Virus record (IMG/VR): IMGVR_UViG_3300043418_000072
Span: 290,099 to 354,098 of that record
Strand: one strand, 5' to 3'
Length of the DNA: 64,000 bases
Part shown: positions 1,303-62,810 of the stretch, in pieces
How the letters are laid out: the number at the start of each line of letters is the position of its first letter
How positions within the stretch are numbered: position 1 is the stretch's first letter
Made by a program: the position numbers and the translations under genes
The notes under the pieces: model-generated
The model's input: only the letters and a program-made list of their open reading frames with translations
What the model was told of the DNA's origin: nothing
Database searches by the model: none

Positions 1303-2511
1303 TTATTTTGTTTGTATAGAGAATACGTCTGTAAACGATTCGCCCCTAATAACATCATACTTCTTTGTATAGTCAAAGAATGCAGATGGCATATTTGGCG
1401 TTAATGTTGATAACGCTTGTTTCACATTTAGTAGCTCAGTAACCAATACTACATAATTTGGTGCAGTTAGTATTTCAACTGCTTTGTTAATTTGCTCAAT
1501 TGCCCGGCCCCGCAGTTGATTAGGCAAGTTGTTAAAGTTCATGCCTGGCGGAGAAGTTACGTTATAGCACTTCACGCCAATGGTGTTGTTTTCGTTATAT
1601 AGCCGCATCAGGAACGTTGCTGTTTCTGCAAAATCCATTAAACTATATGCAGATATTGCTGTTGTAACTTCCATCTTAAACGGCGATTGAAGTTGGTTAA
1701 GTCTAAGTACGTTACTTTCAACTTTTGGCCAATCTGTTCCGCTGCGAATATATTCTGCCGATTTACCCACTGCGTCAATGCTCATTACCATCTGCACTGT
1801 TTTAAATTTACTAAGACGGTCAACAAACAATGGGTTATACACACTGCAATTGGTGTATAGCTCTAGGTTAATTTCTTTGTTGAATCCGTTATCTATTAGA
1901 TAATCAAGGTAGTCGTAATATTCTTTTATTAAGAATGGTTCCCCACCCGTTAAGCATACTTTCCATACTGAGGCCAAGAAGGCAGGGTCCTTAAGACCCT
2001 CAATAGAATTGCTTTCAATTTTTGTAATAGGTATCACACTGTACTCAATGTGGCTACCTTCTTTATCTGGTTTAATGTTGTGCTGAATCTTTTCTGCTGC
2101 AAAGCTAGAGCTAGATGTTTCATCGCACATTCTGCATTTCATGTTACACAGATTACTAAATCTAAGTTCAATGCGGCCCGGTACTGTCGGTGTGTCGGCT
2201 GTAAATTTATTTGCAAACCATTGATCTTCGTACTCGGGTTCTGGGCCTACATTATAGTAATTCCAAATTGCGCCGCGTGTGCTTTTTAGCCCCATGTCTT
2301 CTTTTGTCTTGCAGCCGCCACATGCAGTTGGGGCAGTGCCACTCAGCATATCTGTCTTCATCTGCTTGAGCCAATCACTGTTGATATACTCAGCGGGTGT
2401 CATGCCAGACTCTAAGTTCTTGATGTAATGACACGGACTAGGAGAGTTGGCGTGATAGTACATCATTGTCCACGGTGCTGGGCAAAAGAACTTCTCAGAA
2501 AACTTTGCCAT
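1303..2511 (-). CDS. Radical SAM protein with N-terminal twitch/SPASM-like Cys motifs
   Basis: CNMKCRMC (CxxxCxxC), LTGGEP, YTN, MSIDA. Confidence 0.85.
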   Translation of the reverse strand: MAKFSEKFFCPAPWTMMYYHANSPSPCHYIKNLESGMTPAEYINSDWLKQMKTDMLSGTAPTACGGCKTKEDMGLKSTRGAIWNYYNVGPEPEYEDQWFANKFTADTPTVPGRIELRFSNLCNMKCRMCDETSSSSFAAEKIQHNIKPDKEGSHIEYSVIPITKIESNSIEGLKDPAFLASVWKVCLTGGEPFLIKEYYDYLDYLIDNGFNKEINLELYTNCSVYNPLFVDRLSKFKTVQMVMSIDAVGKSAEYIRSGTDWPKVESNVLRLNQLQSPFKMEVTTAISAYSLMDFAETATFLMRLYNENNTIGVKCYNVTSPPGMNFNNLPNQLRGRAIEQINKAVEILTAPNYVVLVTELLNVKQALSTLTPNMPSAFFDYTKKYDVIRGESFTDVFSIQTK

Positions 2512-2527
2512 TATGGCTCCTGTATTA

Positions 2528-2603
2528 TGGTGCCTCTAACCGGATTCGAACCAGTGACACAAGGATTTTCAATCCTCTGCTCTACCAACTGAGCTATAAA
2601 GGC
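2528..2603 (-). tRNA. tRNA-Phe(GAA)
   Basis: Cloverleaf, loop TTGAAAA, CCA. Confidence 0.95.
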
Positions 2604-2706
2604 AAATTTAAATGGCATTGTGGGTTCCTACCACACCTGAACCTTGTTCCACCGCTCGTTCAAAGACTTATGTGGCGATCCCGTGCATTCGCATTACACC
2701 ATACCA

Positions 2707-2818
2707 TATAGAAGCACTCTCAAATGCAGGCATAGGAGGAGTCAAGCTCTGAAACTTTCGCATCTGCAGATACTAGGCTTCTTCTCCCGCTTTGACTTAT
2801 GCCAAGAATACTTCTATA
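2707..2818 (-). ncRNA. Long-stem structured RNA candidate
   Basis: Inverted repeat 2707-2720/2805-2818 plus inner GCATA..GTCAAG / CTTTGACTTATGC helix. Confidence 0.45.
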
Positions 2819-3045
2819 TAGGCTCCACCGTTAACGACAGCATTCGTCCTGGCTTTATTTTATGTCGGTTAATGCACGGTGGACACACATGCCGACGGGG
2901 TTACAGTTTCAATGATGGGATTCGAACCCACTAACTACCCGTGCGCTGCGGGTTGTGCTACGCTCAATATAAAACTGGTTTACTCTGTTTCGAACCAGAC
3001 CAACAGTATATCTTTGCACTATCTTTCCATGTCGTCTTCATTGTT

Positions 3046-3146
3046 ACCATATAGAAACACACTATGTGGAATCGAACCACTGACCCTTTCACTCCGTAGA
3101 GACCGTGCAATACGCTTAGTCGCCGACTAGTATGTTTTTATATGGT
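3046..3146 (-). ncRNA. Long-stem RNA with tRNA T-arm
   Basis: 19-nt inverted repeat (wobble pairs) enclosing GTGG-TTCGATT-CCAC. Confidence 0.55.
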
Positions 3147-3220
3147 AGAAGCACTGGGGCTCGAACCCAGGACCCTCGGATTAAAAGTCCGATGCTCTAA
3201 ACCAACTGAGCTATACTTCC
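3143..3220 (-). tRNA. tRNA-Lys(TTT)
   Basis: Cloverleaf, loop CTTTTAA, CCA. Confidence 0.95.
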
Positions 3221-3227
3221 ATGACCT

Positions 3228-3358
3228 TACCATATCAAAGTACGCTACGGAATCGAACCGCAGTCGTCAACCTTTCCCTCCAGGGCAATTGATACAATTA
3301 TAGCTTCCACAGGAGCGACCTGATTCACTATAATGCACTAGCGTACTTTGATATGGTA
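3228..3358 (-). ncRNA. Long-stem RNA with tRNA T-arm
   Basis: Perfect 20-bp inverted repeat taccatatcaaagtacgcta / tagcgtactttgatatggta; GCGG-TTCGATT-CCGT inside. Confidence 0.6.
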
Positions 3359-3428
3359 GGGGCACAGAGAATCGAACTCTGGTTCTCTGGTTAAAAGCCA
3401 GATACTTTAGCCGCTAAGTTATACCCCC
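3354..3428 (-). tRNA. tRNA-Lys(TTT)
   Basis: Cloverleaf, loop CTTTTAA, CCA. Confidence 0.93.
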
Positions 3429-3431
3429 ATA

Positions 3432-3506
3432 TGGTCCACAGCCAGAGAATCGAACTCTGTTAGCCCGGGTAAGAGCCGGGTACTTCGCCAGCAAAGTTTG
3501 CTGTGG
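3432..3506 (-). tRNA. tRNA-Lys(CTT)
   Basis: Cloverleaf, CCCGG/CCGGG stem, loop CTCTTAC, CCA. Confidence 0.9.
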
Positions 3507-3519
3507 ATGGATTCGTAAA

Positions 3520-3594
3520 TTACTTTTCTTTTACGTGCCATCCAGGACCATACGGGGGTCTAGGATGACACTATCGTTTACCTGAACGTTTCAT
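3520..3594 (-). other. Mini-ORF MKRSGKR-UAG followed by a hairpin (read-through would give MKRSGKR-X-CHPRPPYGPGWHVKEK)
   Basis: AGGA upstream; TAG at 3573-3571; hairpin TGTCATCC/GGATGGCA begins immediately after the TAG. Confidence 0.5.
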
Positions 3595-3608
3595 GACATT
3601 TTTCCTTT

Positions 3609-4280
3609 TTAATTCCAAAGTAAGTCAAAGTTGCCAGCTAACACTTTCTTAACGCTTGCAGTCTTGTCACTTACGTGATCTTTAACTGTATCGTCTTGAA
3701 AGCGGTATGTGCGAATTTTGTCTCCTCGCATCCCTGAACCAACTTGTTGCTTTCTGTTGCTTGCTAAGTTGTTATTATAACAGTCTTTTGTTATCTTGTC
3801 AACTCTTTCTCTAATAGTTTGCATGGCTTCTGCCAAACTATTTTCCCTACTGCGGCACTGTGCTGTTACTACTGTGCCGCTAGGTACGTGCGTAACACGG
3901 GCACTGTTTTGGTGCTTGTTACGGTGTTGTCCTCCTGCGCCTGTTCCGCTGTACCATTCAATCTTCAGATCTGAGTCAAGAATAGCAGTGGTCGGCACAC
4001 TTGGATCAACGACAGCGACAGTAACGGTACTAGTATGTACTCGTCCTTTTCGCTCAGTTGGTGGTACACGCTGTATTCGGTGTCCACCTGGCTCGTTGTA
4101 TAAGCCAGATAAATCAGCACCCTCGACTAAGATATGAACTTCGCCAAGATACTCATTTATCAGGCGGCTAGTTCAGCCCTTGCTGTGTGCAAATTTAATG
4201 TAGGCTTGCGCCAAGTCTTTTACAAATAGTTTACTGTCTTCGCCACCTTCTGCGGCACGGACTTCAATTACACGTTTCAT
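3609..4280 (-). CDS. prfA: RF1-like peptide chain release factor lacking domain 1, with in-frame UGA at codon 36
   Basis: Hand translation: IEVRAAEGG...SKG*TSR...EPGGHRIQRVPPTERKGRVHTS...GAGGQH...GSGMRGDKIRTY; PxT and GGQ motifs; TGA 4175-4173 is in frame with ORF 3609-3998. Confidence 0.9.
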
Positions 4281-5280: not shown

Positions 5281-5314
5281 TGGCAGAGGATAGTGGAATC
5301 GAACCACTAATGAC
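5281..5314 (-). pseudogene. tRNA 3' half fragment (T-arm + acceptor strand + GCCA)
   Basis: GTCATTAGTGGTTCGATTCCACTATCCTCTGCCA abutting the CCA of tRNA-Gln. Confidence 0.7.
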
Positions 5315-5392
5315 TGGCAGGGGTTATCGGATTCGAACCGATGATACTAATTTCAAAGACTAGTGCTTTAGGCCAAACTAAGCTAAACCCCA
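5315..5392 (-). tRNA. tRNA-Gln(TTG)
   Basis: Loop CTTTGAA, G73, CCA. Confidence 0.88.
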
Positions 5393-5396
5393 ACAA

Positions 5397-5798
5397 TTAT
5401 CTATATTTTTCCAAGTTGTTTAATGTCCATCTACCGACATTTTTACCTTTATTTCTACCAGCAAATGTATCTGTTTGACTATGGCAGTTAGGACATAATA
5501 ATCTTAGATTATCTAGTTTATTATTACTTGAGTCACCGTTTATGTGGTCCACTTGACACTTAATTGGACGACTGGCCCATTCGGATATTCCGCAAGTGGA
5601 ACACTTGTTACCAAATAAACTCATTAACACACTGTATATTGTTGGCCGATTTGTTATTTGCCCATCAACAATAAGTTTTTTATTTTCTGCTAATACCATA
5701 CTAGATTTATGCTGACTCTGGCATGCGTGATTACAATAAACTCTCTCTTGTGTTGAATATCTTGGTATGATTTCTTTTTTACAATTTAAGCATAACAT
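5397..5798 (-). mobile_element. HNH homing endonuclease inserted in tRNA array
   Basis: CSTCG...QVDHINGDSSNNKLDNLRLLCPNCHSQT. Confidence 0.88.
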
Positions 5799-7286: not shown

Positions 7287-7294
7287 ATAACACT

Positions 7295-7323
7295 ATTATA
7301 TATGACACGCACATGCTTGTCAA
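7295..7323 (-). promoter_or_regulatory. Sigma70-type promoter
   Basis: TTGACA-N17-TATAAT. Confidence 0.85.
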
Positions 7324-7330
7324 TAAATTT

Positions 7331-7413: not shown

Positions 7414-7618
7414 TTTGTAAGTAGTTGAGCCGCTGTTATCTCAACGCTTCACCCGAATTAACTAGTCCGGACGGGGGCAGTCTGCCACTAGGAATACTTG
7501 TCCAGTACAGCCTCCAAATGGCCCGCGCACGGTGGGATTCGAACCCATTAACCTTTTACTAAACAACACCTTCGAAGAATATTGAATAGCGTGACGTTCT
7601 CTTGCTGACACTTACAAA
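7414..7618 (-). ncRNA. About 205-nt structured RNA with terminal stem and internal T-arm
   Basis: TTTGTAAGT/ACTTACAAA ends; TGGG-TTCGAAT-CCCA; CTAGT/ACTAG and other helices. Confidence 0.55.
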
Positions 7619-9110: not shown

Positions 9111-9185
9111 TGGAAGAGCTACGGGGAATCGAACCCCGCTTGCCTGGATGAAAACCAGATGTCCTAACCGATAGACGATAGCTCC
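9111..9185 (-). tRNA. tRNA-Glu(TTC)
   Basis: Loop TTTTCAT, CCA. Confidence 0.93.
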
Positions 9186-9186
9186 A

Positions 9187-9269
9187 CTATATGTAAACAC
9201 AATACTCATCCGCTTTACGCTAATATCACTTTAGGCGATTTGATTGTTCGGCATTGTGTTTGCATATAG
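9187..9269 (-). ncRNA. Long-stem RNA candidate
   Basis: 17-nt inverted repeat ctatatgtaaacacaat / attgtgtttgcatatag. Confidence 0.5.
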
Positions 9270-9369
9270 AGCCCTGTAACTTGTACAGGGATATATGACA
9301 GTATCTTTTTAAAGACTGTTAGCATTACAGTACGATCACTGCGCTGCGTTGTTTGTTTAACATGTATGT

Positions 9370-9398: not shown

Positions 9399-9464
9399 CT
9401 GTTATTTTCTAACTGTTGTTTTTATGCTACTCTACACTTTATGCTAATTTCTTAACATGTGTGT

Positions 9465-9493
9465 ATTATAGCACCCATTTCATTAAGTGTCAA
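9465..9493 (-). promoter_or_regulatory. Sigma70-type promoter
   Basis: TTGACA-N17-TATAAT. Confidence 0.85.
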
Positions 9494-9496
9494 ATT

Positions 9497-11424: not shown

Positions 11425-11504
11425 AAATATATTCCTTAAGGTTTCCGGCGCTGGGCTCGGACATAGTATAGAATCAGAATCTATCTATCATCGTCATCCT
11501 TAAG

Positions 11505-11602
11505 GTATTCATAAACAAACTAGTGGGTCGCTGCCAAAAAATATGTTTCAAATATATTCTAGTCTTCTAGTTTGTTTGTGAATACCCTGTATTGCTACAG
11601 GA
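11505..11602 (-). ncRNA. CCTGT hairpin plus 19-bp long-stem RNA candidate
   Basis: gtattcataaacaaactag / ctagtttgtttgtgaatac; same layout as 9187-9292. Confidence 0.45.
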
Positions 11603-12363: not shown

Positions 12364-12372
12364 GATACTTCT

Positions 12373-12401
12373 ATTATATATGCTTAACACAAGAGTGTCA
12401 A
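12373..12401 (-). promoter_or_regulatory. Sigma70-type promoter
   Basis: TTGACA-N17-TATAAT. Confidence 0.85.
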
Positions 12402-12411
12402 GCAATTTGTT

Positions 12412-42193: not shown

Positions 42194-43816
42194 TTACTTG
42201 CTATAGAAGTTATCGTACAAGAATTGGTAGTGAGTAGGCAATGTCTCAATATGTGCCATTACTTCTTCTTTGTGCTCTAGCCACTTATCGTAGATTGTGG
42301 CTCGAAGTTCAGGCGACTCGTGACGTCTCACATCCTCATATCTTATATAATTTGGCTCCACGGGATTGTATCCCTGCCCTGCTGCAATATACAAAATCCC
42401 GCCCATGTTGTTATCAAATGTTCGAGTGCGGTGCATACGCATACCCAAGTCAGATGCAGATCGTACATCGTGTGCCAATCCAGACAAGTTAATAGTCCCG
42501 CCCATCGCTCGTGAATACGTTAAATCGCCTGTAACTTCTTTCCAGTACGGAGTATCGTTACGACAGCTTAGTGCATAGTGCTGACTAATAAAGTCTTTGA
42601 ATCCTAGAATCTGTTCTTGGAATCCATAGTTAAACAAATCAACATCGTAGTTACTAACAATGCCGTTACGCATTAACAGAGTATTGCATAATTTAACAAT
42701 GCCTTCGTGTGTTAGCATCAGTCCTGTACTTTCCAGTGGCTCAATGAAGCCATTAGCAAGACCGATGCCCACTACGTTTTTAACCCATGCACGCTCATGA
42801 ACACCGTGCTTGATCTTAATGTGTCGCACTTCGCATGATTCTGCTCGCTCTGCGTCCGGAAACATCATGCGATTGCTCTTTAGATGTTTGCGAAACTGCG
42901 CTTCTGCTTCTTCTTCAGTGGCATGTTTGCTGCTGTACACATAGCCTGTGCCGATGCGATTCCATAGCGGAATGTTCCATACCCATCCGCACTCAATAGC
43001 AGTGCATGATGTATAGTTTTCCATTTCTGCTTCTTTGTCAATATACGGAATGACTGTAGCAATCGCTCTGTCATTTAACAGTGTGTCATGGAAGCTAGTG
43101 AATGGCTCTTTGAGAGTTTGCTCTAATAGCAGACTCTTAAATCCAGTGCAATCAATAAACAAGTCTGCTTCTAGATATCCACTGTTCTCTGTCCCAATTT
43201 TTTCAATTGATCCATCTTCTCTCTGCACAACATCAGTTACTGTATCTAGTAAGTGCGTCATCCCACTCGGCAAGCACAGATTATCTCTAAGCCATGCGCC
43301 AAATAAGGTGGCATCCATGTGATATGCTGTGTCTTCACTAAAATTAAACCCACGAATTTTGTAATCCTCGTTTCGTGTCATTTTATTCTTATCCGTCATT
43401 AATATGCTGTCGTGATAAAACTCTGCAAAGTTGCTGGGATCAAGATTACCACGGTCGGCTGCTGCTAGGAACCATTCCATTGGGCCGCGAGGTTTATCTG
43501 TGAAATCTAAGATGCCAAAAGGATAATGAAACTTGTGCGGCTCCTCCTTTGGGTTTTCTCTAAAGTCAATGAACTTGATACTGGTCTTATATGTTGCATT
43601 ACATGCTGCCATCCAGTCTTCGTCCTTAATGCCAATTAATGCCAGATATTGATTAATATGTCCGATGGTACTTTCGCCCACACCAATGATAGGAATGTTA
43701 GGACTCTCAATGAGAGTTAGCTTAATGTTAGGTAGAAGCCTGGCTATTGCCGCCGCTGTCATCCATCCACTTGATCCACCGCCCACGATGGTAATTGATT
43801 TTACGTTATGGTGCAT
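42194..43816 (-). CDS. Tryptophan halogenase-family flavoprotein
   Basis: GGGSSGW, IGVGEST, FIDCTGF, GWVWNIP (WxWxIP), FIEPLESTG. Confidence 0.92.
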   Translation of the reverse strand: MHHNVKSITIVGGGSSGWMTAAAIARLLPNIKLTLIESPNIPIIGVGESTIGHINQYLALIGIKDEDWMAACNATYKTSIKFIDFRENPKEEPHKFHYPFGILDFTDKPRGPMEWFLAAADRGNLDPSNFAEFYHDSILMTDKNKMTRNEDYKIRGFNFSEDTAYHMDATLFGAWLRDNLCLPSGMTHLLDTVTDVVQREDGSIEKIGTENSGYLEADLFIDCTGFKSLLLEQTLKEPFTSFHDTLLNDRAIATVIPYIDKEAEMENYTSCTAIECGWVWNIPLWNRIGTGYVYSSKHATEEEAEAQFRKHLKSNRMMFPDAERAESCEVRHIKIKHGVHERAWVKNVVGIGLANGFIEPLESTGLMLTHEGIVKLCNTLLMRNGIVSNYDVDLFNYGFQEQILGFKDFISQHYALSCRNDTPYWKEVTGDLTYSRAMGGTINLSGLAHDVRSASDLGMRMHRTRTFDNNMGGILYIAAGQGYNPVEPNYIRYEDVRRHESPELRATIYDKWLEHKEEVMAHIETLPTHYQFLYDNFYSK

Positions 43817-61811: not shown

Positions 61812-62726
61812 TTAGGCGTTAGCAATTTGAACAGTAGTGTTCAATGTAGCTGCATCAAATGTCCAACGTACCATTGTACCGTCATCAAACTCATGCCCGG
61901 CTGTACCGTATTGTGTCAACAATGCGTTGTGGCTAGTTAGCTTGGTAACATAGTAAGTCTTGCCGCTGCTGTCTGTAGCAGTAATACTCATTTCTCCTAC
62001 TGCTGCTGGTGTAGCTGCAACTAAAGAACATACTGCTGTACCTTCGCTAGTTGTGACGCGATAGCGGTGGCTACCTTTTTGTGCGTTAATATCAGCAACT
62101 AAGCTGTTACTAGTTACGTAAGCGTAAGCAAGGATAGCATTTTCTTGGTTTGTTGCAGAACCAACATCACCACTGTCAGTTGTTAATGTAATAGTGTTTA
62201 CTGTAATACCACCACGGTTTGTGTACGACACTGTTGGTGCTGCTGTGTAGCCAGAACCTTTGTTAGTAACTGTCACTGATAATGCACCGTATGTTAATAC
62301 TGGAACTGCACCAGTACCTGTACCACCAGAAACGCCAGTTACCGCGCTCAATGCAGTAAACGAGCCTGCGGTTGTAACGCTGTTAACGGTAACAACTGCA
62401 CCACCAGCATCGGAAGTTACGTTAAGAACTGCTGAACCGCCTGCTGTAGTGACTGTTAAGTCAAATGTTTGTGCGTTACCATATCCTGTACCACCTGAAA
62501 TTGTGGCGCTAATTACTTTAGACACAATAACACCGGTTGCTGTTACGCCGCCTGGTAGTTGTGGTGCCGAAAATGTAATTGTTGGTAATGTAGTAGTATA
62601 CGAACCAGCAACCGATACTGCTGCACTTGCTAGGCCTTCACCGCCGATGCCATCATCTGCTGTGTAACCACCGTTGGTACCGACGTTACGGTTACCGAAA
62701 AATCTTTTTGCTAAAGGACGTCCCAT
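61812..62726 (-). CDS. Virion structural protein
   Basis: MGRPLAKRFFG; G/T/A-rich. Confidence 0.65.
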   Translation of the reverse strand: MGRPLAKRFFGNRNVGTNGGYTADDGIGGEGLASAAVSVAGSYTTTLPTITFSAPQLPGGVTATGVIVSKVISATISGGTGYGNAQTFDLTVTTAGGSAVLNVTSDAGGAVVTVNSVTTAGSFTALSAVTGVSGGTGTGAVPVLTYGALSVTVTNKGSGYTAAPTVSYTNRGGITVNTITLTTDSGDVGSATNQENAILAYAYVTSNSLVADINAQKGSHRYRVTTSEGTAVCSLVAATPAAVGEMSITATDSSGKTYYVTKLTSHNALLTQYGTAGHEFDDGTMVRWTFDAATLNTTVQIANA

Positions 62727-62810
62727 TTTGTTTTCTCCTTAAAATATGAAAATAGCGTTCTAGGCCTACGCTGATGGTACAGCATAAACTCTCAATTAAG
62801 AGCGAACATA

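What the first reader, a model, noticed from the sequence alone, without database searches (positions are those of the whole stretch)
3046..3358. Two long-stem T-arm RNAs whose stems capture the CCA end of the preceding tRNA-Lys
Seen: in both elements (3046-3146, 3228-3358) the 5' strand of a 19-20 bp stem begins with the ACCA of the upstream tRNA-Lys(TTT), and a canonical T-arm directly precedes the 3' strand. The two stems differ in sequence yet keep pairing. Inference: the CCA is sequestered in the precursor, so tRNA-Lys release needs dsRNA cleavage (RNase III-like), or these are tRNA-elbow mimics.
Basis: partly seen in the sequence, partly recalled or inferred. Interest (0 to 1): 0.65.

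Follow-up and report, generated by a model that had tools for sequence, protein, structure and literature searches.

The report
Phage hairpins clamping tRNA CCA ends
Two structured RNA elements in a 354-kb freshwater phage pair with the CCA tail of the lysine tRNA just upstream, and they belong to a large, phage-only and apparently undescribed family of such "CCA-clamp" hairpins whose function is still unproven.

Summary
On the minus strand each of two tRNA-Lys(UUU) genes is followed by an element (E2 3357..3229, E1 3146..3046). Its 19-position closing stem starts at the discriminator base plus CCA of the tRNA. A canonical T-arm abuts its 3' arm. The two stems differ at five positions, four of them compensatory.

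They are not a local oddity. Pattern scans and a covariance model find the same stem (consensus ACCAUAUWRAAACACAYU paired with AGUGUGUUUYWAUAUGGUA) in several hundred uncultured viral contigs, often several copies per contig. It is essentially absent from 185,579 prokaryotic genomes and from GenBank phages.

Oriented by the tRNA strand, G.U pairs outnumber A.C 124 to 21, so selection acts on the RNA. In an arm-selected sample 58 of 76 hairpins begin with the NCCA of a tRNA. Of these, 36 are tRNA-Lys(UUU), which makes up 4.4% of tRNAs in those loci. The interior is highly variable and only 2 of 76 carry a T-arm. The T-arm is therefore a cargo subtype, and the stem is the conserved core.

Metatranscriptome contigs cover the tRNAs but stop two bases past CCA. 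The best reading is a cis-acting trailer duplex removed by a host double-strand RNase. This is inferred, not shown.

The parts
3432..3506 (-). tRNA-Lys(CUU), first gene of the Lys cluster. It is followed by the bare spacer UAU and then tRNA-Lys(UUU), with no hairpin. The junction reads ACCAUAUGG.
   Evidence: ARAGORN; sequence
3354..3428 (-). tRNA-Lys(UUU) copy 1, with a G1.U72 end pair. A73-C-C-A76 (3357..3354) forms the first four pairs of the E2 stem.
   Evidence: (66.2 bits)
3339..3357 (-). E2 5' arm, 19 nt, ACCAUAUCAAAGUACGCUA
   Evidence: I1
3248..3338 (-). E2 cargo: a long irregular hairpin, a short hairpin with a tetraloop, and the T-arm (3246-3262). The structure is conserved with covariation in 18 related elements.
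   Evidence: fold; 17 pairs with compensatory changes; R2 113.6 bits
3229..3247 (-). E2 3' arm, 19 nt, UAGCGUACUUUGAUAUGGU. A3228 follows, then 7 nt to the next tRNA.
   Evidence: R1 88 bits, E 8e-19
3143..3220 (-). tRNA-Lys(UUU) copy 2, with G1.U72. A73-CCA (3146..3143) starts the E1 stem.
   Evidence: (70.1 bits)
3046..3146 (-). E1: 5' arm 3146..3128, cargo with a C(UACG)G hairpin, T-arm 3080..3066, 3' arm 3064..3046. There is an A.C mismatch at stem position 9.
   Evidence: I3; R1 78.6 bits, E 1.5e-16.
2702..2822 (-). E3: a third family member with the same stem type (one bulged U), no T-arm and no called tRNA upstream
   Evidence: I8; 34.3 bits, E 8e-6
9185..9270 (-). E4: a weaker member (stem CUAUAUGCAAACACAAU / AUUGUGUUUACAUAUAG) that abuts the 5' end of tRNA-Glu
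   Evidence: searches (I6; 28.5 bits), (29.6 bits)
2907..2967 (-). Degenerate tRNA-like remnant between E1 and E3, with an orphan T-arm at 2918-2928
   Evidence: (tRNA model 18.5 bits, below threshold)

Best explanation
E1 and E2 are two members of a phage-specific family of transcribed trailer hairpins, here called 'CCA clamps'. The elements lie on the tRNA strand of a dense tRNA array and so are presumably co-transcribed with it. The 3' arm then folds back on the first about 19 nt after the tRNA body. This puts the discriminator, CCA and often U72 of the upstream tRNA (most often tRNA-Lys UUU) into an 18-22-bp helix. While the helix stands, the tRNA end cannot be trimmed, charged or read as a free CCA. 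The helix is long enough to be cut by the host's double-strand-specific RNase III. That would leave a short AU-rich trailer for exonucleases to trim back to CCA and would discard the hairpin. The interior is a variable cargo. In E1 and E2 it is a tRNA-derived, T-arm-bearing structured RNA, which might add RNase P or tRNA-enzyme recognition or be a small RNA in its own right. Shown here: the structure, its conservation, its strand, its link to tRNA 3' ends and to tRNA-Lys(UUU), its restriction to phages, and the low abundance of the hairpin relative to the tRNA in RNA libraries. Inferred: the identity of the nuclease and the purpose, whether ordered or timed release, stabilisation, or protection of the tRNA precursor.
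For: Structure and covariation: 96.5% of cells pair against 88.3% in shuffles, and 14 of 18 stem pairs show double changes. Slid controls give 34-49% paired. RNA-level selection: oriented by the tRNA strand, G.U = 124 against A.C = 21, and 18 of the A.C cases sit at a single position. CCA capture is general: 45 of 114 elements and 58 of 76 start exactly with N73-CCA of a called tRNA. tRNA-Lys(UUU) accounts for 20 of 45 and 36 of 76, against a 4.4% background. About 33 of 43 Lys(UUU) genes in these loci carry the arm. The stem, not the cargo, is conserved: Lys-linked members have unrelated interiors of 69-133 nt, and minimal hairpins exist. The L106/L136 lineage re-established pairing to CCA by outward extension. 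Only 1 of 33 pattern hits in prokaryotic genomes is real, and it lies on a 7.5-kb MAG contig. Transient element: in four metatranscriptomes the tRNAs are covered, exact-match contigs end at 3352 in three runs, and bins 3240-3313 read zero. There is no U-tract terminator.
Against: No cleavage site was mapped. Contigs cannot show true RNA ends, and a coverage hole proves nothing. The contig end lies 2 nt past CCA, near the base of the helix, not mid-stem where RNase III usually cuts. RNase III has little sequence preference, yet the stem sequence is strongly conserved, which hints at a sequence-specific partner that I did not find: the best neighbour gene is present in only 14 of 79 loci. Cargo types such as the E2 type are themselves conserved structures. 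An E1-like contig is present in one RNA run at about a third of the tRNA depth, so some cargos may be stable functional RNAs. Arrays such as L027 hold nine hairpins with few called tRNAs between them.
Confidence: 0.4

Rival explanations
1. The stem is a scaffold and the cargo is the product. The long helix protects and presents a set of small structured phage RNAs, including tRNA-like T-arm RNAs such as E1 and E2. These would act as decoys or sponges for host tRNA-binding enzymes or tRNA-targeting defence nucleases. The overlap with CCA would be genome compaction, or a way to use tRNA processing to liberate the small RNA.
For: Cargo families are conserved with covariation (A3). A UACG/UUCG tetraloop swap occurs in E1-type cargo. 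One member's cargo is close enough to a tRNA to be called by ARAGORN (L063), and another carries a canonical D-arm (L027 1182-1303). An E1-like contig appears in an RNA library. The link with tRNA-Lys(UUU), a classic target of anticodon nucleases (own knowledge), is suggestive.
Against: Cargo is dispensable: minimal hairpins exist and cargo is unrelated among orthologous positions. Only 2 of 76 arm-selected members carry a T-arm. The E2 body is absent from four RNA libraries in which the flanking tRNAs are deep. No anticodon-loop mimic of tRNA-Lys is visible in E1 or E2.
Confidence: 0.2
2. In the T-arm subtype the element is a tRNA-like processing handle. RNase P (and/or RNase Z) reads the T-arm plus helix as an acceptor/T minihelix. 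It would cut about 7 bp from the T-stem inside the long stem, which separates the upstream tRNA with a trailer of about 8 nt, as RNase P does between tRNAs in polycistronic transcripts.
For: A canonical T-loop UUCGAUU is stacked on the helix in E1 and E2. 73 of 114 elements in the T-arm-seeded sample keep it intact. RNase P is known to separate polycistronic tRNAs and to measure from the elbow (own knowledge; review PMC4919913 listed, not read).
Against: The cut would fall inside a continuous duplex, which bacterial RNase P disfavours. T-arm-less members follow tRNAs just as often: 21 of 41 against 24 of 73. There is no CCA-like sequence after a notional 7-bp acceptor. The tRNA models do not recognise E1 or E2.
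Confidence: 0.15
3. A DNA-level element: inverted repeats acting as recombination linkers or as a mobile hairpin cassette (MITE-like or attC-like single-strand hairpins) that targets the spacer after tRNA genes. This would explain the conserved ends with swappable interiors.
For: The ends are conserved while the interiors are unrelated. Several copies and arrays occur per genome. The hairpin-free junction Lys(CUU)-Lys(UUU) reads ACCAUAUGG, which is the two element ends fused over a shared AUAU core. HNH endonuclease genes are common neighbours.
Against: The strand asymmetry of wobble pairs follows the tRNA strand. T-arms always lie in tRNA orientation. Pairing extends into the tRNA's own CCA and U72, which a DNA repeat has no need for. 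No transposase or integrase neighbour was found. Copies within one genome are not near-identical, as recent transposition would give. Single-strand DNA hairpins would also tolerate G.T, so this is not fully excluded.
Confidence: 0.1
4. Decaying tRNA pseudogenes whose flanks happen to pair.
For: The region between 2600 and 3050 holds tRNA debris: the 2907-2967 remnant and a duplicated T-arm after tRNA-Gln.
Against: The elements are conserved in hundreds of contigs with compensatory changes. Model E-values reach 1e-16 to 1e-19.
Confidence: 0.02

Closest known systems
Bacteriophage T4 stable RNA species 1 (rnaC) and its look-alikes in other T4-like phages
   Same: It is a small RNA of about 140 nt inside a phage tRNA cluster, on the tRNA strand. 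The layout matches E2: terminal helix, long hairpin, short hairpin, then a T-arm directly before the 3' strand of the terminal helix. An analogous orphan T-arm unit follows a tRNA in Aeromonas phage phiAS5. Its function is unknown.
   Different: T4 rnaC has only a short, irregular terminal helix and does not pair with the CCA of the preceding RNA. Neither model detects it: R1 gives 14.2 bits, the same as ordinary tRNAs, and R2 matches only the T-loop. No sequence homology is detectable.
RNase III processing stems of rRNA operons and phage T7/T4 transcripts
   Same: These are long helices formed by sequences flanking a stable RNA in a polycistronic precursor, of about two helical turns, and removed during maturation (own knowledge). 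Helix length here is 17-25 bp with a median near 19.
   Different: Here the helix encloses a variable cargo rather than the mature RNA. It begins exactly at a tRNA discriminator, has a strongly conserved sequence, and is tied to one tRNA species. Cleavage is untested.
Murid gammaherpesvirus 68 tRNA-miRNA chimeric transcripts (TMERs)
   Same: A viral tRNA-type unit is followed directly by hairpins, with tRNA 3'-end processing separating the two (own knowledge).
   Different: That is a eukaryotic Pol III / tRNase Z / Dicer context. Its hairpins do not sequester a CCA, which is not encoded there.
Bacterial Y-RNA-like YrlA
   Same: A long closing stem plus a tRNA-like module with a T-arm. It is found in some phages (own knowledge).
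   Different: In YrlA the T-arm follows the 5' strand, a permuted topology, and the gene sits beside rsr (Ro). Here the T-arm precedes the 3' strand, there is no TROVE/Ro gene in the phage, and no Rfam family matches.
GOLLD and ROOL RNAs
   Same: Structured non-coding RNAs of unknown function, frequent in phages and next to tRNA genes (PMC5737381).
   Different: Those are 500-800-nt ornate RNAs. There is no similarity in size or architecture, and neither matches here.

Membership tests
tRNA (Rfam RF00005 / ARAGORN) | Cloverleaf with a 7-bp acceptor stem, D-arm, and anticodon arm with a 7-nt loop | tested here: not met
   ARAGORN calls no gene in 3046-3142 or 3229-3353. The Rfam tRNA model gives no match to E1 or E2 even at E<=10.
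tRNA (Rfam RF00005 / ARAGORN) | T-arm with loop UUCRANY next to the 3' strand of the closing helix | tested here: met
   GGUUCGAUUCC at 3249-3259 and 3068-3078, directly before the 3' arms
T4 species 1 RNA (rnaC) | Sequence and structure homology to T4 rnaC | tested here: not met
   R1 gives 14.2 bits on the rnaC region, equal to ordinary tRNAs. R2 gives only a 5.9-bit T-loop match.
T4 species 1 RNA (rnaC) | Stable accumulation as a discrete small RNA | tested here: inconclusive
   The E2 body is uncovered in four metatranscriptomes. An E1-like contig appears in one. Contigs cannot show ends or levels.
tmRNA | tRNA-like domain plus a tag reading frame | tested here: not met
   ARAGORN finds no tmRNA. 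Only a 10-bit, 15-nt T-loop fragment matches a tmRNA model.
YrlA / Y RNA | Adjacent or co-encoded Ro (TROVE) protein, and a match to a curated model | tested here: not met
   No TROVE domain in the 354-kb genome. No Rfam match at E<=10.
RNase III substrate | Roughly two turns of mostly Watson-Crick double-stranded RNA | tested here: met
   19 bp (E2) and 18 of 19 (E1), plus the stacked T-stem. The family range is 13-25 pairs, mostly 17-22.
RNase III substrate | Staggered cleavage in the helix that depends on rnc | not testable with these tools
   This needs end mapping in rnc+ and rnc- hosts or an in vitro assay. The phage itself has no RNase III domain.
Intrinsic terminator | GC-rich hairpin followed by a U tract | tested here: not met
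   No terminator-like site in 2300-3800. The 3' arms are followed by AAGGUCAU and ACAAUGAA.
MITE-like mobile element | Near-identical copies with terminal inverted repeats and target-site duplication | tested here: not met
   Inverted ends are present, but interiors are unrelated within and between genomes. Wobble-pair asymmetry follows the RNA strand. A shared AUAU at both ends is compatible with a duplication but equally with the usual UAU tRNA spacer.

The most novel reading that the evidence does not exclude
The clamp is a phage 'pro-tRNA' device. It would keep phage-encoded tRNA-Lys(UUU), the tRNA species most often attacked by anti-phage anticodon nucleases, as a masked precursor that cannot be charged and has no free end. 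A defined nuclease step would then release it. At the same time the conserved stem would serve as a universal cassette holder in which phages exchange a hypervariable repertoire of small structured RNAs, including tRNA mimics.
Probability: 0.15. Interest if true: 0.85.

Novelty: new variant of a known kind. Interest (0 to 1): 0.68.

Why it matters
Phage tRNA arrays are increasingly seen as counter-measures to tRNA-targeting defences, yet how their long polycistronic transcripts are matured is barely studied outside T4. This family is conserved in hundreds of uncultured phage genomes, is missing from Rfam, and is tied to the 3' end of one particular tRNA. That points to an unrecognised step in phage tRNA biogenesis or regulation. 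It also gives a concrete, cloneable cassette (tRNA-Lys, E2, tRNA-Lys, E1; under 500 nt) for testing that step. The conserved stem with exchangeable interior may in addition be a natural scaffold for expressing small RNAs. The T-arm subtype offers a new comparison for the 50-year-old puzzle of T4 species 1 RNA.

Tried and rejected
- Rfam at permissive threshold over 2400-3600: only tRNAs and chance hits.
- blastn of E1, an L006 element, an E2-type element and two T-arm-less elements against 50,697 GenBank phage records: nothing meaningful.
- Megablast of the whole 1-kb region found only the tRNA-Lys body in Aeromonas and Erwinia phages. Their downstream sequence has no clamp.
- Pattern scan of 185,579 prokaryotic genomes: 33 hits, of which only L141 has the stem.
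- Search for a partner gene. No RNase III (two Pfam models), Ro/TROVE, CCA-adding enzyme or RtcB in the phage. Clustering of neighbour ORFs over 79 loci found no family in more than 14 loci. The recurrent ones are an RNase H-like PF04308 domain, phosphatases, radical SAM, HNH, DUF7448 and an RF-1 domain.
- T4 rnaC homology: rejected with two covariance models.
- Terminator or promoter function: no support.
- Codon or specifier-like relation between the arm sequence and the identity of the upstream tRNA: looked at by eye and found no consistent relation.
- Literature: six full-text searches found no description of such elements. Weinberg et al. 2017 mentions only the proximity of GOLLD and ROOL to tRNAs.
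- A joint in one metatranscriptome contig (3064 to 3347) would fuse the E2 5' arm to the E1 3' arm. It rests on 20 nt and is probably a repeat artefact or a relative with a deletion, so I did not use it.

Full report
CONTEXT. The window is the last 64 kb of a 354,098-bp IMG/VR virus record rated complete. It encodes a tail sheath, a T4-type large terminase and a gp15-like sheath stabiliser, so it is a jumbo myovirus. It carries 37 tRNA genes, all on the minus strand, between 1223 and 12566. RNA libraries that hold parts of the region are almost all freshwater metatranscriptomes.

THE OBSERVATION. Read on the minus strand, the order is tRNA-Lys(CUU), tRNA-Lys(UUU), E2, tRNA-Lys(UUU), E1.
- E2: A3357-CCA3354 and the next 15 nt pair perfectly with 3247..3229 (19 bp). 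The T-arm UGCGG/UUCGAUU/CCGUA runs into the 3' arm.
- E1: 3146..3128 pairs with 3064..3046 (19 positions, one A.C, one G.U). The T-arm GUGG/UUCGAUU/CCAC lies one base before the 3' arm.
- These are the first and third strongest inverted repeats in the 13.5-kb tRNA region.
- Both fold far better than shuffles.
- The stems differ at five positions, four with compensatory changes.

A LARGE FAMILY.
- The pattern T-loop + N10-20 + ATATGGTA found 40 viral contigs. About 25 have the same architecture.
- A covariance model (R1) built from 20 of them scores E2 at 88 bits and E1 at 78.6 bits.
- In the window R1 also finds a T-arm-less copy E3 (2702-2822) and a weaker one at 9185-9270.
- Elsewhere in the genome R1 finds three more, one of them directly after a solitary tRNA-Arg(UCU), again with ACCA in the stem.
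- A second scan fixed only the T-loop and the inner part of the 3' arm. It gave 109 contigs and 81 unique elements with stems of 13 or more pairs. Nearly all again end in AUAUGG(U) and begin with (N)CCAUAU.
- R1 over 100 such loci (0.89 Mb) gave 360 matches at E<=0.001, often many per locus. These include hairpins with the same stem but no T-arm. L027 holds nine in 2.6 kb, each with a different interior.
- By contrast, only 1 of 33 pattern hits in 185,579 prokaryotic genomes has the stem, and it lies on a 7.5-kb MAG contig.
- GenBank phages have none.
- Rfam has no matching family.

RNA, NOT DNA. On the model-fitted alignment of 150 matches, 96.5% of cells pair, against 88.3% in shuffles and 34-49% in slid controls. 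14 of 18 stem pairs show changes on both sides. The alignment is fitted to the model, so the slid controls are favoured, but the effect is large. I oriented each element by the majority strand of the tRNAs in its locus, independently of the model. G.U pairs then number 124 and A.C 21, and 18 of the A.C cases sit at one conserved position. The 3' arm (GUGUGUUU) is more conserved than the 5' arm, which varies between forms that all still pair through wobble. This is what selection on a transcript of the tRNA strand predicts.

WHAT IS CONSERVED AND WHAT IS NOT.
- In the first sample, 45 of 114 unique elements begin with the last four bases (N73-CCA) of an ARAGORN tRNA. The offset is exactly 4 in 42 of the 45.
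- In the arm-selected sample it is 58 of 76.
- tRNA-Lys(UUU) accounts for 20 of 45 and 36 of 76, although it is only 4.4% of tRNAs in the same loci.
- About 33 of 43 distinct Lys(UUU) genes are followed by the arm.
- The Lys-linked elements have at least a dozen unrelated interiors of 69-133 nt, with or without a T-arm. L057 and L084 have almost no interior.
- In the arm-selected sample only 2 of 76 have a T-arm, and the median length is 85 nt.
- The invariant part is therefore the helix that starts at the tRNA's discriminator. E1 and E2 represent a minority subtype with tRNA-derived cargo.
- That cargo is not junk. Eighteen E2-type elements share a structure with 17 covarying pairs (model R2 gives E2 113.6 bits). 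E1-type cargo swaps one UNCG tetraloop for another.
- Two observations argue that pairing to the tRNA end is itself selected. In L106/L136 the inner CCAUAU has become UCAUAU and the stem is extended 8 bp outward to reach the CCA. In addition, 16 of 20 Lys tRNAs have G1.U72, and the conserved A after AUAUGGU can take U72.

EXPRESSION. Contigs from four freshwater metatranscriptomes of four studies were laid on 2500-3600.
- The tRNAs are covered at depths of tens to hundreds.
- Exact-match contigs end at 3352, two bases beyond CCA, in three runs.
- Bins 3240-3313 (the E2 body) are empty in all four runs.
- E1 is empty in the deepest run for tRNA-Lys. A 93-nt match to an E1-like relative is present in one run.
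- Contigs cannot give ends or levels, and DNA may contaminate RNA libraries. This is weak evidence that the hairpins are much less abundant than the tRNAs.

MECHANISM. The phage has no RNase III, Ro, CCA-adding enzyme or RtcB, and no gene family accompanies the elements consistently. No terminator-like U tract follows.

The reading I favour (confidence 0.4) is a cis-acting precursor helix. It sequesters the tRNA end until a host double-strand RNase, most simply RNase III, cuts it. Exonucleases then trim to CCA and the hairpin decays.

Points against this reading:
- The stem's sequence conservation suggests a specific partner.
- The contig end lies near the base of the helix.
- Some cargos are conserved structures.
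- Arrays exist with few tRNAs between the hairpins.

The rivals, each with its evidence for and against, are given under Rival explanations: cargo as product or decoy (0.2), T-arm-guided RNase P/Z cutting (0.15), a DNA-level recombination or mobile cassette (0.1), and pseudogene debris (0.02).

COMPARISON WITH KNOWN SYSTEMS. The nearest known object is T4 species 1 RNA (rnaC). It lies in the T4 tRNA cluster and has the same order of helices as E2, including a T-arm before the 3' strand. But it lacks the long CCA-pairing stem, and neither model recognises it. The similarity is one of architecture, not membership. RNase III processing stems, herpesvirus tRNA-hairpin chimeras, YrlA and GOLLD/ROOL share single aspects only. 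Six literature searches found no description.

VERDICT. The finding opens onto a large, phage-restricted, uncatalogued RNA family whose defining trait is the clamping of a tRNA CCA end, preferentially that of tRNA-Lys(UUU). The function is inferred only.

Noticed in passing
window 3545-3562 with 3420-3437 (minus strand): An 18-nt inverted repeat (89% complementary). It pairs a segment 39 nt upstream of tRNA-Lys(CUU) with GGACCA-UAU-GGGGGUAUA, which is the CCA end of Lys(CUU) plus the 5' acceptor strand of Lys(UUU). It would enclose a whole tRNA in a clamp-like helix and compete with two acceptor stems (I5).
   Followed up: partly
window 62724-62803 (-): Match to the Rfam freshwater-2 motif (55.9 bits against a gathering score of 49.9). 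This fits a freshwater origin.
   Followed up: no
window 3609-3998 (-): A 129-aa RF-1 domain protein (ArfB / peptidyl-tRNA-hydrolase-like, PF00472, E 3e-20) immediately upstream of the Lys cluster. It matches only the C-terminal third of a 355-position PHROG profile. RF-1 domain genes recur near the elements in 5 of 79 loci.
   Followed up: partly
window 5292-5315 (-): Directly after tRNA-Gln(UUG) lies a second T-arm plus acceptor 3' strand ending in CUGCCA. This is a partial duplication of the tRNA 3' end. Other orphan T-loops lie at 7535, 8679, 8756, 8978, 9676 and 10534.
   Followed up: no
window 42194-43816 (-): A full-length tryptophan halogenase homologue (PF04820, E 3e-109) inside a phage structural-gene region.
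   Followed up: no
window 11504-11586: A 20-bp, 95% complementary inverted repeat with a 43-nt interior and a different stem sequence. It is a weak R1 match (20.7 bits) and folds slightly better on the plus strand.
   Followed up: partly
window 7290-7330, 9460-9496, 12370-12411 (-): Near-consensus sigma-70-type promoters (TTGACA, about 17 nt, TATAAT) sit in several tRNA spacers, seen by eye in the trailers listed. This suggests a host with canonical sigma-70 promoters and several transcription starts within the array.
   Followed up: no
L027:47-2443: Nine clamp hairpins in 2.6 kb, each with a different interior. One (1182-1303) encloses a tRNA-like unit with a canonical D-arm and T-arm, which ARAGORN calls as a tRNA with a four-base anticodon.
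   Followed up: partly
L063:677-774: A family member whose cargo ARAGORN calls a tRNA. It is in effect a tRNA with an acceptor stem extended to about 21 bp, which suggests the T-arm subtype derives from tRNA genes with leader-trailer pairing.
   Followed up: no
window 5397-5798 (-): An HNH endonuclease gene inside the tRNA array. HNH genes are recurrent neighbours of the elements in other contigs.
   Followed up: no
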